Part shown: positions 5,350 through 35,204 of the stretch, piece by piece | Layout of the letters: each line of letters opens with the position of its first letter | How positions within the stretch are numbered: the stretch's first letter is position 1 | Assembly: GCA_002269645.1 (NCBI GenBank) | Contig: NIVC01002069.1 | Location: 62,001-126,000, forward strand | DNA from: Macrostomum lignano | Taxonomy: Eukaryota | Length of the DNA: 64,000 nucleotides | Direction: 5' to 3' | Program-made: the position numbers and the translations under genes | The notes under the pieces: model-generated | What the model was told of the DNA's origin: nothing | What the model saw: the letters and a program-made list of their open reading frames with translations, nothing else | Databases searched by the model: none

Positions 5350-8300
5350 ATGACATCACACCTTAATAAGAAAGAAAAATCTGAGCTGTCAGAAAAATTA
5401 TTCAACAATTTTAAAGTCCCATCATGGTAAGTTTAAAGTCATAAATTCATAAGTAGACCTATATCATGATAAGTAAGGCTTACATGTTTCTAATATAATG
5501 CATTAATTTTTATAAACCCTAGTGAGTGCCTAGTATTAGGCCTATATTATAATTTTATTAATTAATAAGCCTTGAGTTTAGTTTGTAGACATGGTAAATT
5601 TTTAGTCAGGTGTACCAATAATTCTGGAGAGTCAGAGTGGTCACTTTAGCAGAGGCTATGCTATGGTTGTTCTGGGACTGCTGGGTCTGGTCGCCAGATT
5701 GGTCAGTTATTGATTGTGTGATGACCATGATAATGCTAATGCTCTGCTACCAGTTTGTCATTTATTATTTTTTTTCTAAAGAATAGGCAAATAGTGCTAC
5801 TTAAAACAAATACAAACAAACTAGGTTTTGAGATGCCAGCTTATAGCCTCCTCTGCTTCTTCTTTGGCTCTTCAGCAAATGCCTTAGTATAGGCAGTGGA
5901 CATGCAACAGAACTGGTCCTTGTCTACCCTGAGTTGGTACAGTATGCATATGCACTCCTTGGTGATTGCTCCTGATTGGGTTCTGGCCAAAGTTGTCATA
6001 TTCGAGATTGTCATCTGCGGCTTATAAGAAAAACAACTAAATCATCTAAATTGTCATCATCTCAGTATTGGACAATGCTGCATTCACTAAATTGTCATAT
6101 AGTGAGTTGCATTAGCTGCGCAAGGATCTTAGCTCATGGCGGCAGCGTGTTCTTGCTTGCCAACAAATTAAAACAATTTATAATGAATAGGCCTAACTTT
6201 AGGCTAATATAACTTTAAACTCGCGTTCCTTGCTACTGCAGTCAGTTCTCTTTGCATAAACTAGTTTTGATATTCGTCATCTCTCTATTGTTTATTATAT
6301 ATTAGTCTCAGTAGTCATGCAGCAATCAGCATTAATTGACATAGTTAATATAAAAATTACGGGTGCATGCAAGGGATTTTTGCCTGATTCAGCCTGAAAG
6401 TAGGAATATCCTAAATTAATACACCCTTGCCTTTGGTCAAAGTCATCATATTTAAATGTTTAAGTCTTCCAGATTCGTTTAAGTCGTCATCATCATATGA
6501 CGATTTTGAATATGACAATTTTGGCTGCACCCCCTGATTGGCCCTCTGGGATGTCATTCCATATAATTATGGTCGTAACATGACAGGCTATTTTTACTTA
6601 TAAAATGAAATATAATAATAGAATATACTAAACCAATATTTCGAATAAAGGATTATTTTGTCAAGAATGCATTTATATAGTTTCATATAGATATCATCAT
6701 TAGTATAGATGCTATTAAACCTTGAATGGCACTTATGGTTGTAACAACAGGATTTTTGATATATAGAAACTAAAAGGTAAAAGTCTAAAAGGTAAATTTT
6801 TCATTTTTGATATTTTGCAATACATTTTTTTATTTGACTAAGAACATCTCCAGAAATCATAATCTTTTATTAGAATATATAAACTCATAAAGGCAACAAA
6901 GATACAAAATAAAAGGCAGCATTATGGTCGTAACATTATGGTCATAACATATTTTTTACTGTCAATTCAGTAACTTTGAGGTACCAATGTATTTAAAATA
7001 TAATTGATTATATAGTCACTAATGTCTTTATCCGATTATGCAAGTATAATTTATAGTATAATTATAGTATGCAACTATAATTTTATCTATAGTTTGTTTC
7101 AACCTTCCTAAGCTTTCCTTTTGTTTTTAAAAGGTACACAAACTTAATGATATCTTTTGCTTAGAAAAATGTCCAAATTTTTACAAAAATGACTTTTTGC
7201 TAATTTATAACTTACTAATCCAACATTTTCCCATTCATTTATTCTTGCACTGTATATATTACAAATTTAAAACATTTGGCAAAAAATGGCTGATAAGGCA
7301 ATGGCAAGCAAAAATATTGACTTTTTTCTATTTTCCAAATATGTCCATCTTATCTAGAATGAGCCTTAATATTGTAATTCATCCTATGCAATTACTAATT
7401 AGCTATAGAGCTTTACTCTTACTATAAAGGGGAGGTACCTTGTATACTCCTGAATTTAATTACTTAGATTCTCTTAAACATACAGAATTATCCTAGTAGC
7501 ATATAGTGCCAAGTGACAAAACATTGTTTTAGCTAGTTTTATTCTTAAGTGACATTCCTAATGAATTGAGGTTGCTAGGTATTTTCTTTTTCCAGTGTCT
7601 AGATTAGCTAGTTGTCTAATTCTGATTTCTTATTGGTAGACTTAGTTCAAAAAGGGCTAATTAGGAAATTTCTCCTTCTATACTTGGCAAATAATGCCTT
7701 TTCCTTCTTGCTATTTTGCAATTGGCCATTAGACTATTCATCTGCATGAGTTAGTGACTAGTGATTCTACTCACTAAATAAGTATTTGCTTCAAATTTAG
7801 GCATTTTTTATTAAAAAGTGAATCAAAGCAAGCCAATATAAAGAACAAAAATTTGCCATATTTATTTTCACAAAATGGGGATAGGGTGCAGCATATTTAA
7901 ACAAATCAAGTGTTTATAAGAATTTTTTGTTCCTATAGAGTTAGACAAAATTTGAAAGGGGTTGCCTCTATCAAATATGCTTGTATTAGTAAAGTTAAAA
8001 TTTTGGATTTTTTATTATTTAATTTTTTAGAACTTCTTAACATAGATATCTTGACACTTCATTTGCGAAACTTAGTCAAGTAATTAAAAATTTATAATAT
8101 TTTTAGTGTCTTGCTTTTTAAAATTTTTTGTTAGCTTTTAAATTGACATAATATATTTTCTATACATAAATACCAACTTCAGTGAAGGTCCCATGAGTTG
8201 CCAATATATATCCAGAATTTTTTTAGTATAAATAGGTTTTTTGCAAATGAAAAACACAGTTTGTAGATGAGAGGAAAGATGTGTGAAAATATAAGATGAG

Positions 8301-11008
8301 AAAGGTGATAGGAAAGAATGGAGAAAAAGAGAAGATAGATAAAATGAGAGATGAAATGAAAGAAAAGATGAGAAAGAAAATGGAAGGAAAAGGGAAGCAG
8401 AGAAACAAGAGAACAAGGAGAAGACCAAGAGAAAAAGGGAGAAAGAAGGTTTATAAGAGCTAAGAGCTAACCTTGAGCAGGCTAGATTGCCAATTTGAAG
8501 TTCAACTGTTCAAAGGACCTAAGGGCCAGATGGAGAGGCATCATGGGCCACATGTAGACCACAGGCTAAAGTTTACTGACCCCTGGTATACAGGATTAGC
8601 AATTTAAGATTGCTTTACTTTTGAAGGTAATTTTTATGCATTTTTTGTCATTTAGGCTATCTTCCTAAGTCTTTAGCAAAAGTTTCAGGAAGATCTAAAG
8701 TTTTAAGCATGTTATAATTGACTCAAAATTTAACAAGTCCATTTTTGAAGTATAGGGATAAGAATAAAAAGTATAAAAATATTAACATTTACATGCTATC
8801 ATTGAAACCTAAGCAATAGTTTGAATTTATTATCTTCATTTTTAGGTCAAAATTTTAAATATGGAATAAAAGATTATAATTGTTTGCCTTATTTTTGTAG
8901 TTATAAATGTATCCACTTTTTAGAAAAAGTTTTAGGTTAGTAATTTTTATCAAAGTTTTCTTTGAATTAATATCTTTTAGAGATTTCATACATTGTAAAA
9001 AGATTGTAAGAGAAAGCATATATATTGTATCCAGAGATAAACTATGCTGCACAATTGCTCCAGAAACATGTCACATCAGCTGGGTAAAATTCAGGATTTT
9101 GGCATGTATTGATTGCCCTCTTATGCCAGAAGGATGCATTTATTCAATTATATACAAATTATTCAAGCTTTTTAACAACATTTTTAAATTACCAAACAAG
9201 ATATTAAGTAGTCACGTGCTAATCTAACCTGTTGTTACCAACTAATTTGCAACAGGGCTGGCAGGCCGCAGATGGGTCTCCATCTGGACGTACTAAAAGA
9301 AGGCAAACTAGTACAGAAGCTAATGATCGACGAGAAGAAGTGTTATTTCTTTGGCCGCAATAGGCAGCTGTGCGATTTCCCAGTTGAGCACGAGTCCTGC
9401 TCTCGCGTTCATGCCGCGTTAGTTTGGCACAAATTCGTGTCCCGGCCATTCTTGATTGATCTGGGCAGTACGCACGGTACTTTTATTGGTACTTTTAGAT
9501 TAGAGCCGCACAAGCCGCAACAGGTGCCAATTGATTCCGAAATACATTTCGGCGCCTCTAGTCGGGTGCATATTATCAGGGAGAAGCCGCAGCATCGTCA
9601 GCGATATCTTGAAGGCGGCGAGGGTGAACAGGGTGCCGATCAAGATGGCGTCAGCGGTAATGGTACCAGCGGCGGTGCTGGTAGCGGCGGCATCAGCAGC
9701 AGTTACGGCGGTGGCGGACGCGAGGGCAATTATTTGGGATTGCCACAGACTGAATCTGAATTGGATAATCTTACCGAATTTAATACGGCTCAGAATCGTC
9801 GGATAGCCTCTGTTGTGGCCGCGTCTGTGACTGCCGCTGCTCAGAATCAGGATCCAGATTCTGTTGATGAAATGGGGGTAAGAATGTTTTATTATCTGTT
9901 TTTCATACGGTTAGCAACGTGTGAAGCATTCGTTTTGTGATAAAGATCAGTTTTAGTCTAAGTTTCGTATTTTCTGTAATTCATGCTTTATTTGAAGTTT
10001 TAATCATTTTTTAGCTATCGGGAATCATGAGATTTCAAGGCTTCTATTAATTGACAATGGGCAGACATATTCTAGCTCAGACAATGAGAGAGAAGTAAGG
10101 AGAGAAGTTAATTGTCAAATGGACAGACATATTCTAGCTCAGCCAATGGGAGAGCAGTAAGGAGAGAAGTCAAGTTAGTCGGACGAAACTCAGTCTAAGG
10201 AGGGGCAGGTACAATCCAGCCCAGCCAATAAGAGAGCGACTTGGTATTTTAATTGATTTTAAATTTCTTTTATCAAACTCAGTTTAGGAAGAGTACGTAA
10301 AATCTTGCCCAGCCAATGAGAGAGCGACTTGGTGTTTTAATTGATTTTTAAATTTCTTTTTTATGTTCCTAGGCGATAGCCAATTCGCGCAAGCGTCGCC
10401 GCGGCCGTTGCATCACATTTGCCGACGAAGATGACGTCATCAATCCGGAGGACGTCGATCCGACAGTTGGCCGGTTTCGCAATCTGGTTTACGAAACTTT
10501 CATTCCGAATAGTGGCAAAAAAACCAAGTTTGCTGTTGGCAGTCAGGATGATTCACACGGCCACAATCAGTTGCATTATCACCAACAGAGTCATTCCGCT
10601 GATGAAGATTCAATAGCGACAAATGCTACCTCCGCGTCATCTGGTATTGGCGGCGATTCTTTGTCAGCTTCGGCTCTGAGTTTGGGCGCGTTTAGCGCCG
10701 CTGCTAAGCTGGGCTTGGCGCTGCCAAATCTCACGCCGGATGTAGATGTGGAACCACCGCCAGTGGCGTCAACGACAGCGTCTGTGGCGACTTCGTCTGC
10801 AGTTCCTGTTATTAATAATAATACTGCGCCAAATGCTGGTAAAACGGCGGGATCGCCGGCTGTTGTGGCTGCTGGCAGCGATGAGGCTCATGAAGCTGGA
10901 ACAGCGGCAGCCTCAAGCGCTGGAGAAGCTTTGGACACGCCTAGAAAGAAGAAATACGCTAAGGAGGCTTGGCCAGGAAAGAAGCCAGGATTTCTAGCGT
11001 CTGGTTAA
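5350..11008 (+). CDS. PPP1R8: Nuclear inhibitor of protein phosphatase 1 (NIPP1), 444 aa; exons 5350-5426, 9256-9877, 10373-11008
   Basis: FHA domain (GLHLDVLKEGK...CSRVHAALVWH...DLGSTHGTF), LGLPQTESELDNLTEFNTAQNRRI, RVxF-type RCITF followed by INPEDVDPTVGRFRNL, and C-terminal KKKYAKEAWPGKKP. Exon 1 ends ...FKVPS-TG|GTAAG and joins phase 2 to G-GCT, giving WAGRP. The total of 1335 nt is in frame. Confidence 0.95.
5978..6532. mobile_element. Non-autonomous TIR element (MITE) in NIPP1 intron 1
   Basis: ~40-bp imperfect TIRs (GGGTTCTGGCCAAAGTTGTCATATTC vs reverse complement GGGTGCAGCCAAAATTGTCATATTC). Flanked by the direct repeat CCTGATT(GG) at 5971 and 6533. Confidence 0.65.
6554..7365 (-). 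mobile_element. Kolobok-like MITE, copy 1 (left TIR eroded)
   Basis: Reverse-complement homologue of 48669-49455 along its length. The right end reads CTTATCTAGAATGAGCC|TTAA. Confidence 0.8.
8230..8585. mobile_element. hAT-like MITE remnant with purine-rich core
   Basis: Ends GTTTACTGACCCCTG (reverse complement CAGGGGTCAGTAAAC, a Charlie-like TIR). Shares GGGCC(A/G)GAT..AGAGGC..GGGCC(A/G)CATG with 51480-51584. Confidence 0.5.
10070..10330 (+). repeat. Degenerate copies of the ~80-bp CCAAT-containing repeat (NIPP1 intron 2)
   Basis: CTAGCTCAGCCAATG(A/G)GAGAGCAGTAAGGAGAGA motif, the same family as 11160-11570 and 35555-36115. Confidence 0.75.
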
Positions 11009-11159
11009 AAAAACATATGCTAGAATGTCTAGATATGCCACTTGCAATTAAACTTGTAAAACAGTAGAGCGTCTGTTCGGTGTCACTTAAATTTTAACAT
11101 TTCATTTCCCTCCTCGGGGTTCGCGGCCTCAGGAGAATATAGGTGGAGGGTTGACGCAA

Positions 11160-11660
11160 AACGGACGAAACTCAGTTTTAGGCACAGGCCCAATCTAGCT
11201 CAGAACAGCAAGGAGAGAGAGAGGTCAGAGCCAGATGGACGAAATACGGCCTAGGGGGCAGGCCCAGTTTAGCTCAGCCAATGAGAGAGCAGCAAGGAGA
11301 GAGAGGTCAGAGCCAGATGAACGAAACACAGCCTAGGGGGCAGGCCCAGTTTAGCTCAGCCAATGAGAGAGCAGCAAGGAGAGAGAGGTCAGTCAGATGG
11401 ACGAAACACAGCTAGGGGGCAGGCCTAGTTTAGCTCAGCCAATGGGAGAGCAGCAAGGAGAGAGAGAGAGGTCAGAGCCAGATGGACGAAACTCAGCCTA
11501 GGGGGCAGTCCTAATCTAGCTCAGCCAATGAGGGGGCAGTAAGGAGAGAGAGGTCAAAGTCAGATACAAGCGGGCAAAAGGAAAGCCGAACTGTTTATCG
11601 GTCTGGCTGGGGGCTGGGGCACCACCCCTTTTCTCTCTCGCACACTATGCACGCACTGGA
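11160..11660 (+). repeat. ~82-bp tandem repeat (about 5 units) plus conserved tail, part of a dispersed element
   Basis: CCAAT at 11278 and 11360 (period 82). The tail ACAAGCGGGCAAA...CTGTTTATCGG.CTGGCTGGGG also follows the 35.6-36.1 kb array. Confidence 0.85.
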
Positions 11661-12844
11661 TTTCGGTAGTTTAAGTTTTCTGCAATCTGCAGTTTTAAAT
11701 ATATTTTTAAACAATCAAATCTGAGGCAGTCTGAAGTCCGTCAAACACGATGATGTAATTTTTTATAGCTGCGCTGTCAAAAAGCCAAAGGCAATTGTTG
11801 CAGCTTTGAAATTCCAGTATGTTCACAATTTCAATTAATTTAAATTTAGACGCTAATCTTACTACTAAAAAGTTGTTTAATGCATTTCTTGCGAGTGACC
11901 TATCTAGATAGATAGCGAATATGTTTTCGGTTTATTATAGCTCGTATAAGCGTGCCGTAGTGCCATTTCAAGGAGTATAAATGTTTTTACTTGGAGTCCA
12001 AGTCAATAGAGATCTACAAACCAAAAAAAACTGGTTTACTTTTCATGCATCTGTTTCCAGTTGTACTACTTGTATATTAAAATCGATATAAAATTTTGGA
12101 AACTTTATATAATAACTCTCACTAAATGCGTAGGTTTGTTACTTTGCCTATATATCGTTAAAATTGCGTTTAAATTGCAGTCTGATAAGCAAGAATTTCG
12201 TACTCATTTATATATATAATTAGATTCATGTTTTTTCTGTCTCTAAAATTGTAACGTTAGACAAGAAAAAATTGCATTAATTCTCTCCTTGTAAATTCGT
12301 ACTGTAAACTCGTGTTCCCCTCATTGTATGGCTTTTTAGCATGCTTTCATGTTTGTTTAATATTTTCATATAGTGTAACATTATTGCTTTTACATAGCTA
12401 ATAAGTAGGGTAATGTAACGGTACGAAATATAAGATGTAAATAACCTTATACTCATTTTTCAACACTTCGACACCACTTGTAACACCTTGTAATTTTTAA
12501 TTAATAATTAATTTTAAGCATTTTGATTTAAAAATCCTCCAATTGTTTAATTCAAGTTTATCTTAAAAAACTGGGATGCCAGATTTCGAATTGTGACTCG
12601 CTATAAGTTCGGGTTCGATCGTTAGCCAGTTAGCCTTCCTCTCCCACTAGTCTTAGTACAGATAGATGTTTCTGTTAGTTATATTGTGAGAGATTTTACG
12701 ATTTTAAATCTATATATTCGTCTACTTTTCTCAGTAGTCTAGAATGAATCTCTTACAGGCGTGAGTTAAAATTTTCAAAATCAAATAAAATAGCAACCCG
12801 CCTACGCTACCATAGAGAATTTAAGTTATATCGTTTCTACAATT

Positions 12845-13104
12845 AAGACATAGTGATTAGAGCGTTGAACTCACGACTGAGAGGTCGGGGATTCGATTCT
12901 CGAGACCTTACTTGGAACAGTTTGTGTCCTTGAGCAAGGCATTGCTTCAGTTCCCCCAGTTGTAAATAGCATTAGCTAGGAGTAATTGGGGGTGTGTGTG
13001 TGTGGCCGTAGGCAGCCTTCAGACGCGCCCGCGCAATAGCTGCGGCTGAGCTGTTGGTTGCACATCTGCCCGTTTCAGCAGGTGCAATCAATTATTATTA
13101 TTAT
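12845..13104 (+). mobile_element. tRNA-derived SINE with CORE-like central domain, copy 1
   Basis: A-box-like TAGTGATTAGAGCG, B-box-like GGATTCGATTC, then GTGTCCTTGAGCAAG...GCTTCAGTTCCCCCAGTTGTAAA, a (GT)n tract and an (ATT)n tail. Homologous to 15339-15597. Confidence 0.85.
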
Positions 13105-13167
13105 CAATAGCAAGTAAGCCACCTAATTATTCTTTCCCCGCTGCAAAATATTTAGCGAATCGGGGTT

Positions 13168-13782
13168 ATGCTGACCGCTTCAATTCGGCACATTTTCAAT
13201 TATGCATCGTTTGGTTCAAGAAATTTTCACCTGTCCGTCGTTCTACCGGCTGAGCCGTTGAAAAAGAAGAAACGCGTCGATCCGCAGGTGGAACTGGAAC
13301 GAATCCGAAAGAAGACCCGTCGTATTGAGAAAGAAATCAAACGATTAGAGCAGCGCGGTCGCTACTTGAAGCCGCTAGACGAAATTGAAGGCGAGCGACA
13401 TTTTATAAAAACTTTGGATAGTCGAGAGCGGAAATTGCCGGCGCCGTCAGAAACGGAAGTTGAACAGCGAGCCCTGCTAATGAAAGAATGGACCCGATTT
13501 AAATGGCGCCAACTAGATACAGAGTGCCAACTCTTAGCTAATCAACGCCGAGAACTATACAGAGCGATGCAGCATTTAAGGATGCTGGATCCGAGCTTAT
13601 TCGAATTGGCTACCCAACCCGATGAGTCTTTGTTAGGCCTGTCTTTGTCTGGCCCGTTGTACACTTTGCCGCAGTCGGCCGAAGTATTTGACGCAGTTGA
13701 TGGCGACTATCGCGATGTGACCCCGACCTACCGGTACACCTTCGAGGTGGACAAGAAGATGACCTTTGGAAAGAAAAAATGA
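13168..13782 (+). CDS. MRPL40: Mitochondrial ribosomal protein L40 (mL40), single exon, 204 aa
   Basis: N-terminus like a mitochondrial targeting peptide, then AEPLKKKKRVDP...IEKEIKRLE...LKPLDE...RALLMKEW, which is the MRPL40 signature. Confidence 0.9.
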   Translation: MLTASIRHIFNYASFGSRNFHLSVVLPAEPLKKKKRVDPQVELERIRKKTRRIEKEIKRLEQRGRYLKPLDEIEGERHFIKTLDSRERKLPAPSETEVEQRALLMKEWTRFKWRQLDTECQLLANQRRELYRAMQHLRMLDPSLFELATQPDESLLGLSLSGPLYTLPQSAEVFDAVDGDYRDVTPTYRYTFEVDKKMTFGKKK

Positions 13783-13987
13783 AGTCACTGTAGTAGCTAA
13801 AGTTCCTAACTGCTATATCATTTGTTATTTGTAATTTGCTAAATTGTTATGTTAGGCTATAATAAGCAATATGTCATATGTCTTTAATTGATAAAAGAAG
13901 CATTTTTATAACCGAAGAATTCACGTATATTATCACCGGCTGCGATTGGGGCTTTTGTGTTTTTGTTTATTTTATTTTTTTACCTAT

Positions 13988-14420
13988 GTCACAGATACTA
14001 GAATAACTAGATGGGCCACTCAGCAAATTTGCATGTAAACTACTTTCAGCTCAGTAGTAAGTTAAACAGAAGCATTTTAATGTATTTTACAGTCAAGGCT
14101 CAATTAATGGCTCTTACCCCTCAGCTTAAACACTTCAGCACCCTCCCCCGCCCCACCCCAATTTTTATTGCCTTTCTATGAATATCAGTCTAAAGCTGCC
14201 ATGTACATTTAAGTGGTTAATCTACATTATGTCTGAACCAATTAGCAAGTTGTTTACGCCTGCAAGCTTGGGCTTCTAAACCTATCAAAGTCATTTCAGC
14301 TGTCTTTATTTTTATAAAATAGCTTATATATTCTTCTTTGCTACTGAACTGAAAGTAGAAAGCTGTTTTACTACGTATATATGCCTGAGTGGCCCATCTA
14401 GTTATTCTAGTATCTGTGAC
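13988..14420. mobile_element. 433-bp MITE with perfect 36-bp TIRs and 4-bp CTAT target duplication (Sola-like)
   Basis: GTCACAGATACTAGAATAACTAGATGGGCCACTCAG at 13988 and its exact reverse complement ending at 14420. CTAT lies at 13984-87 and 14421-24. Confidence 0.85.
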
Positions 14421-14604
14421 CTATGTTTCTGTATTACTTTTAATTTAGGATTATTTTGAATAGCCAGCTAAAAAGCGTTTAAGAAACAATGAAAGAGACA
14501 ATAAAATAAGTTACACTAGCTTACAGCATTTTCTACTATTAGTAGCAGTATATATAACTTTGAACTTAACATTTTGCATGAACCAAAGCATTGAAAGTCA
14601 CGGC

Positions 14605-18765: not shown

Positions 18766-18941
18766 CGCCATGATGTATATTTTCAGTGACACTGGCCAAA
18801 TTTATATTACGGCTGCACCAGTAGCAAGTTGTTTTCTTGTTTTATAAAATCGCTTACGTATTCATTCATGCTACTAAGCTGCAAGTAATTTTGTTAAAAG
18901 AATGTCAATTAAATTATATTTAAATTTTGCTACAGCCAATA

Positions 18942-21709: not shown

Positions 21710-21739
21710 ATTTAACACGTTGAAAACGTTATCGTGATC

Positions 21740-23040: not shown

Positions 23041-23265
23041 TTTTACACCTCTTAGCTGCTAAGCTCTTCATCAATTAGCTGTAAATAAGGCCTGTATTAG
23101 CGTATAATTTTCCTGTTTTAGTATATCTGTATGATTAAGTATGATGAATGCTCTTGTCTTGTATAGATTTTTATAGACGTTAATAAAATTGCATGATCAA
23201 ATTTATACGCAGCAACCGTAAAGGGAAACAAATAAAATCCAATTATAAAAGGCATCAGCTTGACC

Positions 23266-26200: not shown

Positions 26201-27325
26201 TAAGGTTACTTAAAAGAGTTAATCTAAGGTTGCTTAAAATAGTTAATCTAAGGTTACTTAAAAGAGTTAACCTAAGGTTACTTAAAATAGTTAATCTAAG
26301 GTTACTTAAAAGAGTTAATCTAAGGTTGCTTAAAATAGTGAATCTAAGGTTGCTTAAAAGAGTGAATCTAAGGTTGCTTAAAATAGTGAATCTAAGGTTG
26401 CTTTAAAGAGTGAATCTAAGGTTGCTTAAAAGAGTGAATCTAAGGTTGCTTAAAAGAGTGAATCTAAGGTTGCTTAAAAGAGTGAATCTAAGGTTGCTTA
26501 AAAGAGTGAATCTAAGGTTACTTAAAAGAGTGAATCTAAGGTTACTTAAAAGAGTGAATCTAAGGTTGCTTAAAAGAGTGAATCTAAGGTTGCTTAAAAG
26601 AGTGAATCTAAGGTTACTTAAAAGAGTGAATCTAAGGTTGCTTAAAAGAGTGAATCTAAGGTTGCTTAAAAGAGTGAATCTAAGGTTACTTAAAAGAGTG
26701 GATATAGAGGTGCTTAAAAGAGTGAATCTGAGGGTGCTGGGTCAATCTAGAAATTCATATTTTACTAACAAAGGCTAACCAAACGCAATTAACCAATTAT
26801 TAATAACCTGCAGCGGACCAGACCGGATCGCCGTCAGATCAGCGAGCTCTGCTAGTAAAATCGCGCGACAAGCTTCGCGAAGCCCTGGACCGCACCTGGA
26901 ACAGTCAGGCGCATCCGTTGCACGCTGATATTTGCGCCACGCTAGAAGAGGTTGAGGAACGTCTAGATATTGCTGCCTCGGCCCCCGCTAGCCAGTCTGT
27001 GCTTACTAACGGCGTCTCGATGCAGCAGCAGCAGCAGCAGCAGCAGATTCCTCAGCTGTCAACTCCATTCACTCCAACTGCCCAGCACCACAGATCCTAT
27101 CAGCCTCGTCTAACGCCAGACCGAGTGGACTCTGTTGTTAGATCAATTAGCGCAGCTAATGACAAAGTTGTCAACCAGCTAATTGATCAGAATCGTCAAC
27201 TGATGGAGCAGAATAAACAGTTAATGGCTAGTAATCAGGATCTGATTCGTATGATGAGTCAGCAGCGTCAGGAGGCTAATAAAATTGAACAATTAGAGCG
27301 CTGCATTGCCGAAATGAGATTGCAA

Positions 27326-27358
<33 letters not shown>

Positions 27359-30300
27359 ATTCACGCTATGCAGCACCAGTCGCCGGCTATGGCTTTGCAC
27401 CATCAGCATCAGCCTGCGCCGCCGCCGCCGCCGCCGCCGCAGTTCTATCTGCAGGGCCCCAACGCTACGGCCGCAGCCGCAGCAGCTGCCACAGCCGCCG
27501 CCTATCATCACCAACAGATTGGCGCCCTGCGGCCTTCTCTGGCTCAACCGCATCCGCAGCCGCTGATTCCGCCGCACACCGCTGCTGCTTCGCTAATGAT
27601 TGGCCGAACACCCACCGGAGCCATCAAGGATATCGCCTACGATGACGACGACGATAATGATGATAAACAAGATGCCGGCGGCGAGATGGACGAGGTCGGC
27701 GCCGAGGTGTACAGACAGCAGAAGCAGCAATCGCAGCTACCGACCGCATCCGCTCAAGGCTTCTTCAGCATCGGCGGTAGCCTCTTTGGCCAGCCGCCAA
27801 CCGCGGCCGCTGCCGCCGCTGCCGCTGTTCTGTCGGCTTCAGGCCGGCCGCCAATGCAGCCGCAACAGCAGCCGACTCCGTTTACTCTGTCAGCTAGGCC
27901 TGGCCTGCTGCCGACTCCACCAGTGTTTGGCGTGTCGTCGCCGCGTCAGCCTCCTCCGTCAGCACCTTCGGCGGCTGTTCAACAGTCATCAACGCCGAAG
28001 CCTCAGTTAGTCATCAAGCCGGTGCCGACTTCGGCTACGGCAGCCGTTTCTACCGATTCTGGAGGTAAAGCACCGCCCCAGAATCCGCTGTCGTTTTTTG
28101 GTTTCGGTAGCAAAGCAACGCCGCCGCAGCAACAGCAACAGCAGCAGCAATCGCCATCAATGCAGTCTGGCCTGTCGTTTGGCATTAAGAGCGGTCCCAC
28201 TGCTGCCGCCGCGACCGCACCGGCAACTTCCTCATCGGCGGCTGCAGCGGCGGATAAAGACGATTCGGCCGATCATCCGGAGAGTTTCGAACCGTCGATT
28301 GAATTTACGCCAGTTGTTAATCTGCCCGATAAGGTTTGTGTAAACTATTATCTTAGGGGCTGCCATTAAGGCTTACCCCACAAGGTCAGACTATCTATAT
28401 GACCCGTTGGATTTTGAGTTTTTAAAGTAGGCACGAAAGGTGAAGAGTTTTGCACCTTCTGCCTCACTTTCGCCTCTCTTATGCCTATTTTGTGCCACTT
28501 GTGCACCGCGTGTTCACCTGAGTGCCTCTGCAGGGTCAAAAGGTGAATTTAAGGCACGAAATAGGCGGTAGGGGCACAGGTGCCATAGGGGAGTTAGGTG
28601 AATTAAAGGTGCACAGTGTGCGTTGAGGCACAAAAGGTGAACAAAGTAGGAATTGGGGGCATTGGTGGAGTGAAAGGTGAAAAAAGGTGCGCTGCGGTGG
28701 AGGTGCATAAAAAGTGTACAGTGTGCACTGGAGGCACGAAAGGTGAATAAAGGGTGCACAGTGGGCACTTTAGGCGTAGAGGCAATGCAAGGGGCGTTTC
28801 AACTTGCGAAAGTTCTTTGCTACTTTTCCTTACTATTCTTTGAACAGATTCAAAACTTTTCCTCACTGATGCAAAACTTTTCACCACTTTTCGGAACTTT
28901 TCCTGAGTATTTGAAAGTCATTAAAACTTATCAGTATAGGAAATGTTTGCTTTCGTGGTTTGTCAGGATCAGGAAGGGGATAGCAGCGATTAGTATAGGT
29001 GTAAATAAAGCTTTTCTATGTTCAATCTGTGCATGCAATGTACGAGTATGTAACTCTCAGTTAATTTTTTGTTGCTGATTACGCTCGTATTAATGCGTTA
29101 ATTCGTGCATAGGCATGGAAGGTGAGCGAGGTGCACAGAAGAGGCACTTTTGGGGTCTATTTCGAGCGTGTTTTGGAAATGCACCTGTATACATATTTAC
29201 GCCGCACATGTACAACTTATGCACCTCTAATTCACCTTTCGTGCACTTTCTGCGCCCCTTCAGCACCTTTCCTGCACCTGCTGTGCCTCGCTTGTGAGCC
29301 TGCTGTTCACCTTTTGCGCACCTCCAGTGCCCCTTATGCACCTTTCCTGCCCCTACCGCCGCAACCAATCAAAATTGAGAATTCACCTACTGCCTGACCA
29401 CTTCACCGATTGTACACCTTTCATGCCTCTTTTCGAAAATATTGGTGACATTTAGGCATAAAAGGTGCACTCAGGTGCATTTCCAAAGCACACACGAAAT
29501 AGGCCACCAAAGTGCCTCTTTTGTGCACCTCGCTCACCTTTTATGCCTCTGCAGGTGCATAACTTTTCCAACGGGTGAGGCAGGGGTCGGCCGGCGAAGC
29601 CTCTCAATCCGGCCCGCTCATGGTTTGTCTCTTCTCATCTCTCTTTTCTTGTTTCTCCTCTCCTAAATCTCCTCTCATCCCTCATCTGACCCTGGAGGTA
29701 AAAAAATTTCACCGAACCCCCAATCTAAGGTCTCTTTCACAAGCTCAAAACATATGCGAAGCAATAATTGATATTTTCCGGTTTTCTCAAGGTGGAGGTG
29801 AAGACTGGCGAGGAGTCGGACGTGCGGCTGTTCGCAGAGCGGGCCGCCCTCTACCGATTCGTGCAGGGCGAGTGGAAGTCCCGCGGCATCGGCGAGCTGA
29901 AGATTCTGCAGAGCGAAGGCGGAGCCAAATACCGAATTGTGATGCGGCGCGATCAGGTGAAGAAGCTGTGCGCCAATCACTGGATTGATGCGGCAATGAA
30001 GCTGAAGGAGGTGCAGAACGTCGCCAACGCCGTGTCCTGGACTGCCAACGATTTCTCTGACGGCGAGGCCAAGATGGAGATTCTGTGCGCCAGGTTCAAA
30101 ACGCCTGAGCAGCTGGCTGAGTTCACCGCCAAGTTCACCGAGAGTCAGAAAGCTCTGCAGTCTGGAAAGCAGGTGGCTCCATCAGCTGCTGCTCCTAGTG
30201 ATAGCAAGGCCGCTCCAGCGGCTGCAGCCTCATCAAGCTCAGTTCCCAGCCTCCTGGACCGGCTGAAGCCGCCACCAGGCAGCTGGTCCTGCCCGACATG

Positions 30301-33300
30301 CGCAGTTCAGAACACAAAGGACCAGGCCACGTGTCCCTGCTGCTCCACTGCCAAGCCCGGCGCCCCTGCCGCCTCGGCGAGTCCCGCCACCCACGCCGCT
30401 CCGGCCTCGTCAACTGCCACCACAGTGTCTTCTGCTCAGCCGCTGTTCTCCTTCGGTGGAATGTCGTTCGGCGGCGGCAGTCAGCAAGTCAGCAAGCCGA
30501 CGGCGTCCGCCGGTGCGGGCGCCGCCGCTCCCAGCAGCTCAGCCTCACCCTTTTCCAATTTCTCCTTTGGCTCTTCCGCTAGCAAGCCGTCAGTTTCTAC
30601 TGCCGCCCCTATTGGCTTGGCCGCAGCTTCATCATCAGCAGCATCATCAACTGCCGCCGCTCCGGCGCCATTCGCCAGTTTTTCATTCGGCATGCCGCCG
30701 AAATCTTCTGCCGCCGCGTCTTCCACCGCCACTGCCGCTGCTCCCGCCAGTTTTGCCGGTTTCGGCGGCGTCAGCTTTAGCGGGCTGAACTTTGGCTCGT
30801 CAAAGTCGCCAGCGGCAACGGCTACCGCTGCTGGTGGGCCTCCGTCGCCGGCTGTTGCTGCAGCCGGCGCTGCGTCCGCCTCTGCCGCTGCTGCTGCTGA
30901 CGATTCAGCTGACAATCCTGAGAGCTTCGAACCGTCTGTTGAATTTGCGCCCGTGGTTAATCTGCCGGATAAGGTTGGTTTATAATACCGCTAACAAATT
31001 CCTTAGGGTCAAGATGTCGTTAATTCGCAACCGTACCTACAATGAGGGACCCGTTGAGTGCGTTACCGTGACCAGCCAGAATCGCTAAAGAGCAATTGCA
31101 AGCAACTCACTAGTGACTCTAGCGACTCTTTGGCGACTCGTGTGACTTTTTAACAACTCAAACCACTGTTATGCGATAGAGAGGCGACTGTTGAGTTAAA
31201 AATGCATCACGTGAGTTGCAGAATCGTAAGAGAGTCACGAAAAAGTTGTCCAATAGTCGTTGCGTTGGCGTTTTAACTTTCTACTAACTCAACAACTAGA
31301 CTAAATAGAGTTGTTATAAATGCGAAATACGGTTCTAATTTATAAACTGACGCAGATGCGCTTCTAACGCAACTCGGTGATTCTACAGCGATTCTGGCAC
31401 GCCTCAGGTACGACTCTACGGCCCCTGTGTCATTAAAGATCGAAGCATCCCAGAATCGTTTAGAGTCACTTCTTTCCTATTTTCATCCCCTGCGTTACCT
31501 GCAATGACTCTGGCCCGCTTGTTCACCCAGTATAAGAGGGGGGGCTCACGTTTTTTATCCATTTTCCTCTCCTCAGTTTGCTAGGGATTAATGAGATAAA
31601 ATGGGGTTTAGATGATAAAAACTAAAGTATTTTCGAAGCCATCCATTCCGCATTTTGTTTAACGTATATCTTCTCTAATTAAGTATCGAAAATCTGTGAA
31701 TGACTCGAATCAGCTTACATTATTATTTAAAATTCGATCATTTCTCTTGAAGCAGTTAGCTTGTAGAAGCTAAGTATGCTTGCATTCAGTTACTGCCCCT
31801 CAGGTTAATTAGTTGTTAGTCATTTATTTAGTTAGCTATAGTTAATTAGTCTGTTAGTTAGTTAGTCATTTATTTAGTTAGCTATAGTTAATTAGTCTGT
31901 TAGTTAGTTAGTCATTTATTTAGTTAGCTGTAGTTAATTAGTCTGTTAGTAAGTTAGTAAATTAGTTAGTCCAAACCAAGGTATTTTGTCGCTAGAAAGT
32001 TGGATGCCTTAGCTTTTACCTTGGCTTGCTTCCAGGTGTTTTTTCTTGTCTAAATTGGTCAAGTTTACAGAATCATATTATAAACTTGCTCTAACAATAC
32101 TGATTTTCAATGTCGCTACTCAAGGTGGAGGTGAAGACTGGCGAGGAGTCGGACGTGCGGCTGTTCGCGGAGCGGGCCGCCCTCTACCGATTCGTGCAGG
32201 GCGAGTGGAAGTCCCGCGGCATCGGCGAGCTGAAGATTCTGCAGAGCGAAGGCGGAGCCAAATACCGAATTGTGATGCGGCGCGATCAGGTGAAGAAGCT
32301 GTGCGCCAATCACTGGATTGATGCGGCAATGAAGCTGAAGGAGGTGCAGAATGTCGCCAACGCCGTGTCCTGGACTGCCAACGATTTCTCTGACGGCGAG
32401 GCCAAGATGGAGATTCTGTGCGCCAGGTTCAAAACGCCTGAGCAGCTGGCTGAGTTCACCGCCAAGTTCACCGAGAGTCAGAAGGCTCTGCAGTCTGGAA
32501 AGCAGGTAGCTCCATCAGCTGCTGCTCCTAGTGATAGCAAGGCCGCTCCAGCGGCTGCAGCCTCATCAAGCTCAGTTCCCAGCCTCCTGGACCGGCTGAA
32601 GCCGCCACCAGGCAGCTGGTCCTGCCCGACATGCGCAGTTCAGAACACGAAGGACCAGGCCACGTGTCCCTGCTGCTCCACTGCCAAGCCCGGCGCCCCT
32701 GCCGCCTCGGCGAGTCCCGCCACCCACGCCGCTCCGGCCTCGTCAACTGCCACCACGGTGTCTTCTGCTCAGCCGCTGTTCTCCTTCGGTGGAATGTCGT
32801 TCGGCGGCGGCAGTCAGCAAGTCAGCAAGCCGACGGCGTCCGCCGGTGCGGGCGCCGCCGCTCCCAGCAGCTCAGCCTCACCCTTTTCCAATTTCTCCTT
32901 TGGCTCTTCCGCCACCGCTGGTGGTGCCGGGACAGCTTCGACAATCAAGTTTGGCTTTGGTGGTTTCGGCTCGACACCAACTTCGGCTGACAAGGTGGAA
33001 CAGGCGCCGTTGTCAGATAAAGACTCGGCCGCCGCGAAGGACTCAAAGGATAAAGACTCGGCCGCCGCGAAGGACTCAAAGGACAAAGACTTGGCCGCCG
33101 CGAAGGACTCAAAGGACAAAGACTCGGCCGCCGCGAAGGACTCAAAGGACAAAGACTCGGCCACCGCCAAGGACTCAAAGGACAAAGACTCGGCCGCCGC
33201 GAAGGACTCAAAGGACAAAGACTTGGCCGCCGCGAAGGATTCAAAAGATAAAGACTCGAACGACTTGGTTCTGGTCGGCTTCGAGCCGTCCGTCACCGAC

Positions 33301-35204
33301 GACCAGATTCGTCGGGCTCGCCGATTGAAGCTGCCGGATTATTTCTATGCCTACGAGAATCGCGCCAGCGATGACGGACACGAGAGCGACGGCGAGGGTG
33401 CCTACTCTGGGACTCGGCAGGTGAGATACTGCTCACCGTGTGACCGAATTGTGCGGGCCACATTAATTTGGGGCTTGCTGGGCGATTCACACGTACGCCT
33501 CATGAGAGCCAAACAGTGTACAGCCTGTCAATTAGGAAGTCACAAATGGCTGCTGTACACCCGCTGTACACCCTGTGTGAGCGTGTGTACGAACTAACTA
33601 AAAAACATTTATTGCACAGATACTAATACACTCTATTGTGCTAATATAGTGCATATATATTACCCGACACTTCACAGGAGCAGCAGGAGTCCCAGCAACA
33701 ACAACAGCAACAACAGCAGAAACCGTCTCAGCCTCCTAAACAACAGGAAATGTCAATTGGCATATTTGGCGAAAAAGCCAGTAGTATGTTTTCATTTGCT
33801 AGTCTGGCCTCCACTGCCAACACTGACGCTTCCTCGAATGCGCCAGTCAACTTCTCTTGGTCTGGCGCCGGCTCTGTACTCTTCGGTGGCGGCGCCGCTG
33901 CCGCTGATAAAGCCGCCGACAATCGTCAAGCTGATTCAGCCGATGAAGATGAGGACGAGCACGATCCGCACTATGAGCCAGTGATTGAACTGCCGGAGCT
34001 AGTCTCAGTGAAATCTGGCGAAGAGGAGGAGACTGCGCTGTTCTGTCAGCGGGCCAAGCTGTACAGATGGACCGACGGTCAGTGGAAAGAGCGCGGAGTT
34101 GGTCAGATGAAAGTTCTGCAACAACGCGACGGCGGCGGTAGTCGGCTTGTGATGCGACGTGACCAGGTGCACAAATTGTGCTGCAATCATCGCATTGGCC
34201 CCAATCTGCAATTCAAACCGATGCCAAACTCTGCCACCAGCGTCTGCTGGTTCTGCGTCGACTTCTCGGACGAAACCGCGCCGGAGGGTCGCAACGAGCA
34301 GCTGGCAATCAAGTTTAAAAATAAGGAAGAGCTAGCCGAGTTCCTGAAAGTCTGCTCTGAGGCTACTGGTGCTACCGCGAGTCCAGGTTTGTACTTGTTG
34401 ACCCTATCACCTGTTACTTTAAACCCTTGTCTGCCTTCAGAATTAGCGCCATAATCCTCAACTTCCTGATCCTTTCAGAATTGGCGCCAAATACTCCTCT
34501 TTAGCTTCCGGATCCTTCAGAATTAGCGCCATAATCCTCAACTTCCTGATCCTTTCAGAATTGGCGCCAAATACTCCTCTTTAGCTTCCGGATCCTTCAG
34601 AATTAGCGCCATAATCCCCAACTTCCTGATCTTTCAGAATTGGCGCCAAATACTCCTCTTTAGCTTCCGGATCCTTCAGAATTAGCGCCATAATCCCCAA
34701 CTTCCTGATCTTTCAGAATTGGCGCCAAATACTCCTTTTTAGCTTCCCAATCCTTCAGAATTGGCTCCAAATACCCCTGTTTAGCTTCCCAATCCTTCAG
34801 AATTGGCTCCAAATACCCCTGTTTATCTTCCCGATCCTTCAGAATTGGCTCCAAATACCCCTGTTTAGCTTCCCGATCCTTCAGAATTGGCTCCAAATAC
34901 CCCTGTTTAGCTTCCCGATCCTTCAGAATTGGCTCCAAATACCCCTGTTTAGCTTCTTAATCCTTCAGAATTGGCGCCAAATACTCCTCTTTGGCTTCCC
35001 GATCCTTCTGAATTGGCGCCAAATACCCCTGTTTAGCTTCCCGATCCTTCAGAATTGGCGCCAAATACCCGTTTCCTGATCCTTTACGCCTTTTATTTGC
35101 TATACTAGCGTAGTAAAAGAAATGAATAATAATTTATTCTAATTGAATATGCAGGCAAAGCGAATCAGTCGAACACCAACGGTTCTAATGATGTCAATCA
35201 GTGA
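23266..35204 (+). CDS. RANBP2: RanBP2/Nup358 nucleoporin and SUMO E3 ligase homologue, ~2292 aa; exons 23266-25387, 26814-28333, 29792-30973, 32125-33420, 33678-34386, 35155-35204
   Basis: N-terminal TPR region MFRSKQQVDKQV...GYQFAKLYFDVKDYQSAK. Three RanBD domains (KTGEES..LFAERAALYRF...RGIGELKIL...MRRDQVKKLCANH; KSGEEEETALFCQRAKLYRW). Two RanBP2 zinc fingers (WSCPTCAVQN...CPCCSTAKP), FG motifs and one IR-like segment. Phases 1,0,0,0,1 give 6879 nt in frame. Confidence 0.93.
25600..26735. repeat. 24-bp minisatellite (AAAAGAGTGAATCTAAGGTTGCTT)n in RanBP2 intron 1
   Basis: Read directly. It explains the LLKRVNLR ORFs. Confidence 0.97.
29111..29548. mobile_element. Foldback/MITE-like element with ~75-bp inverted arms in RanBP2 intron 2
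   Basis: AAGGTGAGCGAGGTGCACAGAAGAGGCACTTT...GGAAATGCACCTG at 29119-29182 is the near reverse complement of 29472-29540. Similar GTGCAC-rich sequence occurs at 28430-28790. Confidence 0.7.
29581..29694. mobile_element. Short hAT-like MITE derivative
   Basis: Starts CAGGGGTCGGCC and ends TGACCCTG. Contains AATCCGGCCCGCTCA and a pyrimidine tract, as at 21560-21709. Confidence 0.5.
31075..31515 (+). repeat. ~450-bp dispersed repeat (RanBP2 intron 3)
   Basis: GAATCGCTAAAGAG...CAACTCACTAGTGAC...GTTACCTGCAA.GACTCTGG. Homologues lie in intron 1 of both M-Ras copies. Confidence 0.8.
31805..31970. repeat. ~42-bp tandem repeat of TTAG-rich units (about 3-4 copies)
   Basis: TTAGTTAGTCATTTATTTAGTTAGCTATAGTTAATTAGTCTG repeated. 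Confidence 0.8.
33022..33252 (+). repeat. Coding 33-bp minisatellite, 7 units, encoding (DSAAAKDSKDK)n in RanBP2 exon 4
   Basis: Exact 33-nt period, in frame. Confidence 0.95.
34435..35080. repeat. 42-bp minisatellite, with an 80-bp (38+42) dimer in its left part, in RanBP2 intron 5
   Basis: AATTGGCTCC recurs at 34801 and 34843. AATTAGCGCC recurs at 34441 and 34521. Confidence 0.93.

What the first reader, a model, noticed from the sequence alone, without database searches (positions are those of the whole stretch)
5350..35204. Candidate five-gene eukaryotic operon (NIPP1-MRPL40-PPWD1-MTP-RanBP2) processed by SL trans-splicing
Seen: five unrelated housekeeping genes on one strand with stop-to-start gaps of only ~0.8-2.2 kb, much of it mobile or repeat DNA. 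Seen: several ATGs follow an unpaired AG acceptor within a few nt (TTTAG|CGAATCGGGGTTATG for MRPL40, TTTGCTACAG|CCAATAATG for MTP, CATCAG|CTTGACCATG for RanBP2), and AATAAA hexamers at 23182 and 23231 precede the RanBP2 acceptor. Known: flatworms and nematodes resolve polycistronic RNAs by spliced-leader trans-splicing, and nematode operons are rich in RNA-processing and mitochondrial genes. Inference: one promoter upstream of NIPP1 drives a ~30-kb polycistron.
Basis: partly seen in the sequence, partly recalled or inferred. Interest (0 to 1): 0.7.

Follow-up and report, generated by a model that had tools for sequence, protein, structure and literature searches.

The report
Macrostomum spliced-leader operon cluster, already annotated

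Summary
The window is Macrostomum lignano assembly Mlig_3_7 (764 Mb; 43 exact copies of its 35-nt spliced leader, SL). In this species SL trans-splicing and operons with repeat-inflated spacers are already published. The five genes are real, all on the + strand, with no opposite-strand gene between them: NIPP1, mL40, PPWD1, a CDF metal transporter (MTP) and a RanBP2-like gene. Stop-to-ATG gaps are 2159, 795, 1057 and 1894 nt. High-copy repeats fill much of each gap; without them the spacers are about 1150, 370, 600-750 and 850 nt.

Exact protein look-ups recovered GenBank locus tags. PPWD1 and MTP share one transcriptional-unit prefix in the window (Mlig001891 g2, g3). NIPP1 and mL40 share one in the homeologous copy (Mlig025639 g1, g2). 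The RanBP2-like gene is published as TRANSSPLICED. PPWD1's acceptor is at 14580. RanBP2's is probably at 23197, not 23258. mL40's is unverified.

The assembly was polished with RNA-seq, and SL 3' ends appear written over several acceptors, which marks trans-splice sites. One promoter driving all five genes is not shown. Verdict: operon-type organisation well supported, ordinary for this species, low novelty.

The parts
3991..5349 (+). Region upstream of NIPP1 that is collinear with the homeolog (93% identity). It is the candidate promoter, 5'UTR or outron. Further upstream lie a 14-bp satellite (1 to about 1720) and an ORF with a reverse-transcriptase-like motif.
   Evidence: no Pfam family in its ORFs
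5350..11008 (+). NIPP1 (PPP1R8-like) gene. CDS exons 5350-5426, 9256-9877 and 10373-11008; 444 aa. GenBank PAA61104.1, BOX15_Mlig000701g2 (complete CDS).
11009..13167 (+). Spacer 1 (2159 nt). ATTAAA at 11047; satellite-bearing high-copy element 11062-11810; unique stretch 11811-12850 with AATAAA at 12784; SINE-like high-copy element 12851-13113. Repeat-adjusted length about 1147 nt.
13168..13782 (+). mL40/MRPL40, single coding exon, 204 aa. The homeolog copy is PAA84229.1, BOX15_Mlig025639g2. Its SL acceptor is not identified.
13783..14577 (+). Spacer 2 (795 nt). MITE at 13990-14418 with terminal inverted repeats of about 34 nt (first-look search found >2800 candidate matches for the spacer query; the 38 scored outside this locus all cover the MITE). 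AATAAA at 14500. Repeat-adjusted length about 369 nt.
14574..14580 (+). PPWD1 SL acceptor position (14580|14581). It reads TTGCATG, identical to the last 7 nt of the SL, and I interpret it as an RNA-seq polishing footprint over a real ...TTTCAG acceptor. The SL would then supply the AUG.
   Evidence: (GenBank CDS starts at N, the codon after the ATG; the UniRef protein from another source reads LTFFQ|NQS)
14578..17884 (+). PPWD1 gene. Exons 14578-15120, 15661-16140 and 16871-17884. GenBank PAA61106.1, BOX15_Mlig001891g2 (5' partial).
17885..18935 (+). Spacer 3. (TACC)n-like repeat array at 18464-18764. Upstream acceptor TTTTCAG| ends at 18786 (the homeolog reads ATG there). ATTAAA at 18908. 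Main acceptor GCTACAG| ends at 18935 (the homeolog reads CATG). Repeat-adjusted length 601 or 750 nt, depending on the acceptor.
18936..21371 (+). CDF metal transporter ('MTP'). The annotated mRNA and partial CDS start at 18936 (PIMSSTK...); ATG at 18942. Exons 18936-19854, 20445-20713 and 21072-21371. GenBank PAA61107.1, BOX15_Mlig001891g3.
21372..23197 (+). Spacer 4. High-copy TE fragments at 21565-21686 and 21751-21931; 23-bp tandem array at 22384-23056; AATAAA at 21981, 22278 and 23182. Repeat-adjusted length about 850 nt.
23190..23197 (+). Probable RanBP2 SL acceptor (23197|23198). It reads ATTGCATG, the last 8 nt of the SL. The homeolog reads TTTCATG. I interpret both as polishing footprints.
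23266..34454 (+). RanBP2-like gene. First coding exon 23266 to about 25500 (TPR region); three RanBP1 domains at about 29795-30151, 32128-32484 and 34008-34364. The 3' end is not resolved (AATAAA at 35338). Published ids Mlig001371.g1 and Mlig024359.g1: TRANSSPLICED, neoblast-enriched.

Best explanation
The region is an SL-resolved, operon-type gene cluster of Macrostomum lignano.

Proposed mechanism: RNA polymerase II reads through several of these same-strand genes. Each upstream message is cleaved and polyadenylated. Each downstream message gets its 5' end by trans-splicing of the single 35-nt SL, which ends in AUG, onto an acceptor just upstream of its coding region.

Shown or documented:
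- The species, its SL and the published operon biology.
- Gene content, strand and the repeat content of the spacers.
- PPWD1 and MTP share one annotated transcriptional unit in this contig; NIPP1 and mL40 share one in the homeolog.
- Annotated mRNA 5' ends at 14581 (PPWD1) and 18936 (MTP).
- The RanBP2-like gene is flagged trans-spliced.

Inferred:
- All five genes can be read from one promoter upstream of NIPP1.
- RanBP2's acceptor is at 23197.
- PPWD1's AUG comes from the SL.
- SINE, MITE and satellite insertions merely stretched spacers that were once about 100-400 nt.
For: Species and published biology:
- The genome has 764,410,778 b in 5269 contigs and 43 exact copies of the M. lignano SL. 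Proteins from this contig are named Macrostomum lignano.
- In this species 30% of genes are trans-spliced and 15% lie in operons. Repeats inflate operon spacers. The published operon rule is adjacent same-strand genes, the downstream one trans-spliced, with a repeat-adjusted distance under 1 kb (PMC8629364).

Locus tags:
- Window: NIPP1 = Mlig000701g2, PPWD1 = Mlig001891g2, MTP = Mlig001891g3.
- Homeolog: NIPP1 = Mlig025639g1, mL40 = Mlig025639g2.
- Prefixes name transcriptional units that the TBONE pipeline cut at SL and poly(A) signals (PMC5730564).

Annotated 5' ends: the partial CDSs start at 14581 and 18936.

SL footprints:
- The assembly was polished with RNA-seq.
- In 23 kb of well-aligned window/homeolog sequence, the CAG/ATG double substitution occurs only at the two acceptors upstream of MTP.
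- SL-like 7- and 8-mers sit at the PPWD1 and RanBP2 sites.

Other support:
- The RanBP2-like gene is flagged TRANSSPLICED.
- Repeat-adjusted spacers are 1147, 369, 601-750 and 850 nt.
- No opposite-strand gene lies inside the cluster.
- The same five-gene order is present in the homeologous contig C385.
Against: - No RNA data could be read directly. The meaning of the locus tags is inferred from the Methods text.
- The RanBP2-like gene is 'g1' under separate unit names, and NIPP1 in the window carries a different prefix from PPWD1 and MTP. The homeolog's PPWD1 and MTP are each 'g1' of their own units. No single annotated unit therefore spans all five genes.
- Shared units could reflect read-through, or merging by the transcript assembler.
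- RanBP2 appears in a neoblast-enriched list. The other four were not found in the stored (truncated) part of that table, which may hint at separate regulation.
- Spacers are no more conserved between homeologs (91-96%) than introns are (86-97%).
- mL40's acceptor is unknown, and spacer 1 is slightly above 1 kb when measured CDS to CDS.
- The poly(A) hexamer and acceptor motifs are not all conserved in the homeolog. For the acceptors, part of this is explained by the footprints.
- Gene order is not conserved in two parasitic flatworms.
Confidence: 0.7

Rival explanations
1. There are several transcription units rather than one. The cluster would hold two or three shorter operons or hybrid operons, for example NIPP1-mL40, (mL40-)PPWD1-MTP, and RanBP2 on its own. 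Internal promoters would lie in spacers 1, 2 or 4, and each primary transcript would still be trimmed by SL trans-splicing.
For: - Unit prefixes differ along the cluster: Mlig000701, Mlig001891, and Mlig001371/Mlig024359.
- RanBP2 is 'g1' and neoblast-enriched.
- About 60% of trans-spliced M. lignano genes are not in operons, and 93% of operons have only 2-3 genes.
- The first kilobase of spacer 4 is 97% identical between homeologs, higher than the megablast identities of the other three spacers, 85-95%.
Against: - The authors state that RNA-seq units tend to split in repeat-rich operon spacers, and the splits here fall at repeats.
- The splits differ between the two homeologs, as expected for an assembly effect.
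- The E-box- and CRE-like motifs in spacer 4 lie inside high-copy TE fragments.
- No promoter feature could be demonstrated.
Confidence: 0.4
2. The five genes are conventional monocistronic genes that happen to lie on one strand. Shared transcriptional units would then be read-through or assembler merges, and SL trans-splicing would only trim each gene's own outron.
For: - Five consecutive genes on one strand has a chance probability of (1/2)^4, about 6%.
- An AG near an ATG is at chance level.
- Neighbours of mL40 are not conserved in other flatworms.
- Spacers of 0.8-2.2 kb could hold promoters.
Against: - Two independent junctions have shared units in the public annotation.
- Once repeats are removed, the unique DNA in spacers 2-4 is short: 369-850 nt including the 3'UTRs.
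- The sequence immediately upstream of mL40 and PPWD1 is a SINE or a MITE.
- The flanks of the cluster have no recognisable gene for more than 5 kb upstream, and none was recognised (no Pfam match in the long ORFs tested) in the repeat-rich 29 kb downstream within the window.
Confidence: 0.12

Closest known systems
Macrostomum lignano operons as defined by Wudarski et al. 2017 (PMC5730564) and Ustyantsev & Berezikov 2021 (PMC8629364)
   Same: Same species and the same single 35-nt SL. Same-strand neighbours, downstream genes trans-spliced, spacers inflated by repeats, and conserved housekeeping or neoblast genes. The locus tags already encode multi-gene transcriptional units here.
   Different: No published unit covers all five genes. 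Five-gene operons are in the rare tail: 93% of published operons have 2-3 genes and the maximum is 9. Spacer 1 is borderline for the 1-kb repeat-adjusted rule.
Caenorhabditis elegans SL2-type operons
   Same: A polycistronic precursor, 3' end formation of the upstream gene coupled with trans-splicing of the downstream gene, and enrichment for housekeeping, mitochondrial and RNA-processing genes (my own knowledge).
   Different: Nematodes use a specialised SL2 and spacers of about 100 nt. M. lignano has one SL, and the spacers here are 0.8-2.2 kb (0.37-1.15 kb after removing repeats).
Operons without an intercistronic spacer (C. elegans SL1-type; Ciona, Oikopleura)
   Same: Canonical poly(A) hexamers lie 10-75 nt upstream of the acceptors: AATAAA at 23182 before 23197, ATTAAA at 18908 before 18935, AATAAA at 14500 before 14580. 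This would fit cleavage close to the acceptor.
   Different: The poly(A) sites are unknown here. This reading would require repeat-laden 3'UTRs of 0.7-1.8 kb. The published M. lignano mode is about 100 bp between the mRNA end and the next acceptor.
Polycistrons of parasitic flatworms (Schistosoma, Echinococcus, Hymenolepis; PMC12582326)
   Same: The SL ends in AUG, operons are mostly short, and acceptor sites can be shared.
   Different: Those candidates are defined by spacers of 300 bp or less (S. mansoni median 99 bp). The SL sequence is different: no cestode-type SL-RNA pattern occurs in this genome. This gene order was not seen around mL40 in E. multilocularis or C. daubneyi.

Membership tests
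M. lignano SL operon (operational definition of PMC8629364) | Immediately adjacent genes in the same orientation, with no opposite-strand gene between them | tested here: met
   Five + strand genes. Minus-strand ORFs of 100 aa or more inside the cluster match no Pfam family above its curated cut-off.
M. lignano SL operon (operational definition of PMC8629364) | The downstream gene is SL trans-spliced: PPWD1, MTP, RanBP2 | tested here: met
   Indirect evidence only. GenBank partial CDSs start at 14581 and 18936. SL-3'-end footprints sit at 14574-14580 and 23190-23197, and at both MTP acceptors in the homeolog. RanBP2 is flagged TRANSSPLICED. No reads were inspected.
M. lignano SL operon (operational definition of PMC8629364) | The downstream gene is SL trans-spliced: mL40 | tested here: inconclusive
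   The annotated CDS is complete. Neither the RIGVM... form nor the LTAS... form exists in public records. No footprint was found, apart from a T/C difference at position -4 of the ATG.
M. lignano SL operon (operational definition of PMC8629364) | Repeat-adjusted intergenic distance below 1 kb | tested here: met
   Spacer 2 is 369 nt, spacer 3 is 601-750 nt and spacer 4 is about 850 nt. Spacer 1 is 1147 nt measured CDS to CDS, so it falls under 1 kb only if the UTRs take about 150 nt or more. Spacer 1 is therefore borderline.
M. lignano SL operon (operational definition of PMC8629364) | A precursor RNA (transcriptional unit) spans the cistrons | tested here: inconclusive
   A shared locus-tag prefix exists for PPWD1+MTP (window) and NIPP1+mL40 (homeolog). 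It is not seen for MTP to RanBP2. mL40 to PPWD1 is unknown because the window's mL40 tag is masked. The meaning of the prefix is inferred from the Methods.
Operon in the strict sense (one promoter, one primary transcript) | A single transcription start region for all cistrons | not testable with these tools
   No CAGE, nascent-RNA or long-read data were reachable. Records from this genome are withheld from the contig look-ups.
C. elegans SL2-type operon | A specialised SL for downstream genes and a spacer of about 100 nt | tested here: not met
   M. lignano uses one 35-nt SL. The spacers here are 0.8-2.2 kb raw.

The most novel reading that the evidence does not exclude
All five genes are made from one primary transcript of about 30 kb whose intercistronic spacers have absorbed SINE, MITE and satellite insertions, growing to 0.8-2.2 kb without breaking the operon. 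In addition, the start codon of PPWD1 is not in the real genome at all but is donated by the AUG at the end of the SL. The 'ATG' and 'TTGCATG' seen in the reference would then be footprints of RNA-seq-based polishing, which overwrote CAG acceptors at this and probably hundreds or more trans-splice sites in Mlig_3_7.
Probability: 0.3. Interest if true: 0.45.

Novelty: already known. Interest (0 to 1): 0.2.

Why it matters
For operon biology this is a routine example. Operons resolved by SL trans-splicing, including ones with repeat-inflated spacers, are published for M. lignano, and the public locus tags already group some of these genes.

Its use is as a worked case showing that kilobase-scale, transposon-filled spacers are compatible with operon-type annotation in a flatworm.

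The more useful by-product is technical. Polishing the reference with RNA-seq seems to have written the SL's 3' end over real splice acceptors. That creates spurious genomic ATGs and destroys AG acceptors in a widely used model-organism assembly. It also leaves a mark from which trans-splice sites can be read off the DNA sequence alone.

Tried and rejected
1. A cestode or trematode origin. The best mL40 hits were cestodes at 45% identity, but a cestode-type SL-RNA pattern is absent from the genome and the M. lignano SL is present 43 times.

2. Direct RNA evidence. Exact-protein contig look-ups for mL40 from both copies returned nothing, because this genome's records are withheld. Logan contigs of distant mL40 relatives showed no recognisable SL.

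3. Supplementary tables of five papers, searched for gene names or Mlig ids. Only the RanBP2 entry was found. A full-text search for the ids found nothing.

4. A regular spacing of 26-27 nt between a poly(A) hexamer and the acceptor (note). I weakened this idea after the PPWD1 and RanBP2 acceptors moved to 14580 and 23197, and because the hexamer and acceptor are not both kept in the homeolog.

5. A promoter in spacer 4, suggested by CACGTG and TGACGT motifs. Those motifs lie in high-copy TE fragments.

6. Neither predicted partial protein is on record.

7. A third genomic copy of PPWD1 carrying CAG|AACC. Only two copies exist in this assembly. One pattern search was wasted on a mis-specified pattern.

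8. A RanBP2 protein search for its locus tag. It returned nothing.

9. Rfam and tRNA scans of the window. Both found nothing.

10. Conservation of the spacers as a sign of function. They evolve like introns.

Full report
**Origin of the window.** The window is positions 62,001-126,000 of contig C2069 in an assembly of 764,410,778 bases in 5269 contigs. The 35-nt spliced leader (SL) of Macrostomum lignano (CGGTCTCTTACTGCGAAGACTCAATTTATTGCATG; PMC8629364) occurs 43 times exactly in this genome and never in the reversed control. The size and contig number match Mlig_3_7: 764 Mb and 5270 scaffolds. Proteins encoded here are named Macrostomum lignano in GenBank. A cestode-type SL-RNA pattern is absent.

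**The five genes.** All five are real and lie on the + strand.
- NIPP1: FHA domain. PDB matches to NIPP1 entries 2jpe (E=3e-53) and 3v4y, the PP1-binding stretch. My three-exon model (5350-5426, 9256-9877, 10373-11008) equals PAA61104.1 exactly.
- mL40/MRPL40: 13168-13782, Pfam PF09812.
- PPWD1: WD40 plus cyclophilin. Exons 14578-15120, 15661-16140 and 16871-17884 reproduce PAA61106.1 apart from the first M.
- CDF metal transporter (MTP): Cation_efflux, ZT_dimer, TIGR01297. The model 18936-19854, 20445-20713, 21072-21371 equals PAA61107.1.
- RanBP2-like: an N-terminal TPR region and three RanBP1 domains. Its 3' end is unresolved.

No minus-strand ORF inside the cluster reaches a Pfam family's curated cut-off. 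Upstream of NIPP1 lie a perfect 14-bp satellite and an ORF with a reverse-transcriptase-like motif, but no recognisable host gene. Downstream of RanBP2 the window is largely tandem repeats and low-complexity sequence, and none of the long ORFs tested matches a Pfam family above its cut-off.

**The spacers.** Stop-to-ATG gaps are 2159, 795, 1057 and 1894 nt. Searches of the whole genome show that much of each gap is high-copy DNA:
- a satellite-bearing element at 11062-11810; the first-look search returned >3600 candidates, and the scored matches all cover it;
- a SINE-like element at 12851-13113 that ends 55 nt before the mL40 ATG (>2500 candidates);
- a MITE at 13990-14418 with terminal inverted repeats of about 34 nt (>2800 candidates);
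- a (TACC)n-like array at 18464-18764;
- TE fragments at 21565-21686 and 21751-21931, plus a 23-bp tandem array at 22384-23056.

Without these repeats the spacers are about 1147, 369, 601-750 and 850 nt.

**What is published for this species.** Wudarski et al. 2017 assembled RNA-seq into 'transcriptional units'. They found that nearly 7% are precursors holding several trans-splice sites and encoding two or more proteins, and cut them into genes at SL and poly(A) signals with the TBONE pipeline. Ustyantsev & Berezikov 2021 report that 30% of genes are trans-spliced and 15% lie in operons. The acceptor motif is [T/C]TNCAG. Repeats inflate operon spacers, and RNA-seq units tend to split in repeat-rich spacers. 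Their operational rule is adjacent same-strand genes, the downstream one trans-spliced, with a repeat-adjusted distance below 1 kb. Of the operons, 75% have two genes and 18% have three; the maximum is nine.

**Public annotation of this locus.** Exact-sequence look-ups returned the following tags.
- Window contig (207,254 bp): NIPP1 = BOX15_Mlig000701g2 (complete); PPWD1 = BOX15_Mlig001891g2 (partial); MTP = BOX15_Mlig001891g3 (partial). The mL40 tag is masked.
- Homeologous contig (639,492 bp): NIPP1 = Mlig025639g1; mL40 = Mlig025639g2; PPWD1 = Mlig020160g1; MTP = Mlig011061g1.

Prefixes name transcriptional units, or clusters of units that are 95% identical. Two unrelated genes that share a prefix with consecutive g-numbers in transcription order should therefore come from one assembled unit. 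This step is my inference. On that reading, PPWD1 to MTP is co-transcribed in the window and NIPP1 to mL40 in the homeolog. A published table lists the RanBP2-like gene as Mlig001371.g1 / Mlig024359.g1, TRANSSPLICED and neoblast-enriched. It is 'g1' under its own names, so no annotated unit links it to MTP.

**Acceptors.**
- MTP: the GenBank protein starts PIMSSTK in both homeologs. This proposal is corroborated.
- PPWD1: the GenBank protein starts with N, the codon after the ATG.
- mL40: the protein is annotated complete. Its acceptor is unknown.

On its own, an AG within 16 nt upstream of an ATG is found at 64% of all ATGs in the window.

**SL footprints in the assembly.** At 14574-14580 the window reads TTGCATG|AACC, identical to the last 7 nt of the SL, and there is no AG. 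The homeolog reads TTTTTATG|AACC. A UniRef M. lignano PPWD1 that is not from this GenBank annotation (A0A1I8GS73) reads LTFFQ|NQS, which implies ...TTTTTYCAR|AACC, a good acceptor. Only two genomic copies exist in this assembly.

The Methods of the assembly paper state that the Canu assembly was polished with Pilon using Illumina DNA reads and RNA-seq mapped by STAR. I infer that SL-bearing RNA-seq reads overwrote the few bases upstream of trans-splice acceptors with the SL's 3' end.

I tested this on a 32-kb alignment of the window with its homeolog. The only well-aligned places where one copy has CAG and the other ATG are 18784-18786 (window TTTTCAG|TGACAC, homeolog TTTTATG|) and 18933-18935 (window GCTACAG|CCAATA, homeolog GCTCATG|). 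Both are acceptor-like sites within 160 nt upstream of the MTP ATG. The strict filter kept one of the two, and none was found on the opposite strand. That filter counted 45 adjacent double substitutions of all kinds in 23,379 well-aligned columns.

A further site is 23190-23197: the window and a third partial copy on contig C3858 read ATTGCATG|ATCAAA (8 nt of SL), while the homeolog reads TTTCATG|.

Genome-wide, the SL's last 11 nt occur 1092 times against 184 for the reversed control and about 570 expected from base composition (my calculation). Of 20 sampled sites, 9 extend to 12 nt or more and 3 to 14 nt or more of SL. That is modest support for footprints elsewhere, although retroposed SL fragments could also contribute.

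If the inference holds, PPWD1's AUG is supplied by the SL.

**Homeolog comparison and synteny.** The same five genes lie in the same order on contig C385. Exons are 97-100% identical, apart from the 77-nt first NIPP1 exon at 92%. Alignable introns are 86-97% identical and spacers 91-96%. The spacers therefore carry no detectable extra constraint. The SINE, the MITE and the satellites are shared by both copies, so they predate the duplication. In Echinococcus multilocularis and Calicophoron daubneyi, mL40 has other neighbours on the opposite strand, in line with the poor conservation of flatworm operons reported in PMC12582326.

**Poly(A) signals.** Canonical hexamers lie shortly upstream of the acceptors: AATAAA at 14500 before 14580, ATTAAA at 18908 before 18935, and AATAAA at 23182 before 23197. 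Spacers 2 and 3 contain only one canonical hexamer each. This fits 3' end formation close to the downstream acceptor. However, the poly(A) sites themselves are unknown, and the 14500 hexamer is altered in the homeolog. I treat it as a lead only.

**Verdict.** Operon-type organisation is well supported for PPWD1-MTP and NIPP1-mL40, and is plausible for the whole run under the published distance and trans-splicing rule. A single promoter for a 30-kb five-gene transcript is not shown. I estimate about 0.4 that all five are read from one start, and about 0.7 for the operon-type explanation as stated. This is a known kind of system in this species and is partly recorded in the public annotation, so novelty and interest are low. 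The polishing-footprint observation is the one thing worth passing on.

Noticed in passing
window 14574-14580 and 23190-23197; homeolog G000:C385 at the two MTP acceptors (aligned to window 18784-18786 and 18932-18935): The 3-8 bases upstream of trans-splice sites read like the SL's 3' end (..ATTGCATG) instead of a CAG acceptor, and they differ between homeologs exactly there. The assembly paper says RNA-seq was used for Pilon polishing. This looks like a systematic assembly artefact that creates spurious ATGs and also marks SL sites.
   Followed up: partly
whole genome G000; 20 sampled sites, L023-L042: The last 11 nt of the SL occur 1092 times, against 184 for the reversed control and about 570 expected from base composition. 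Only 43 of these are full SL copies. Of 20 sampled sites, 9 extend to 12 nt or more of SL and one to 32 nt.
   Followed up: partly
window 18780-18787: A second acceptor-like site, TTTTCAG|TGACAC, lies 149 nt upstream of the main MTP acceptor, and the homeolog reads ATG there. It is probably an alternative SL site. With it, the SL's AUG would be followed at once by UGA.
   Followed up: partly
window 1 to about 1720: A perfect 14-bp tandem satellite (more than 100 copies at 100% identity) at the window's start leaves all three minus-strand frames open.
   Followed up: no
window 2429-3031 (+): A 200-aa ORF carries a reverse-transcriptase-like motif (..FAKAFDSV.., ..LQGDTLAPLAF..) judged by eye. 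Pfam gave no hit. It is probably a decayed LINE fragment upstream of NIPP1.
   Followed up: no
window 29768-30985 and 32104 to about 33100: The RanBP2-like gene contains an internal, near-identical duplication of a block holding a RanBP1 domain and a CxxC (zinc-finger-like) motif. The two translated blocks are identical over roughly 300 residues.
   Followed up: no
window 10047-10237, 11161-11667, 35549-36207: One family of repeat built from units of about 80 bp sits in a NIPP1 intron, just after the NIPP1 stop and just after RanBP2. The genome-wide first-look search returned thousands of candidates.
   Followed up: partly
window 6554-7369 and 48665-49452: An element of about 800 bp in NIPP1 intron 1 has an inverted copy 41 kb downstream (84-92% identical).
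   Followed up: no
G000:C3858:1-4777 (L022): A third, near-identical (98-100%) partial copy of the locus starts inside the last MTP exon and continues into RanBP2. It has an insertion of about 196 bp in spacer 4. It is likely a duplicated-chromosome or haplotig contig.
   Followed up: partly
G000 contigs C1214, C3830, C4525, C4853: Full SL copies recur every 11.3-11.4 kb on C4525 and C4853 and at more variable spacings of about 11-25 kb on C1214 and C3830, so the SL-RNA genes appear to sit in long tandem repeat units.
   Followed up: no
window 37700-42500 and 52200-53000: Long ORFs are open in several frames over tandem repeats (for example the GAPFSQQVWRPLLTAGLAPPSHSRF units). No Pfam family matches, and the region is collinear with the homeolog to at least 48.3 kb.
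   Followed up: no
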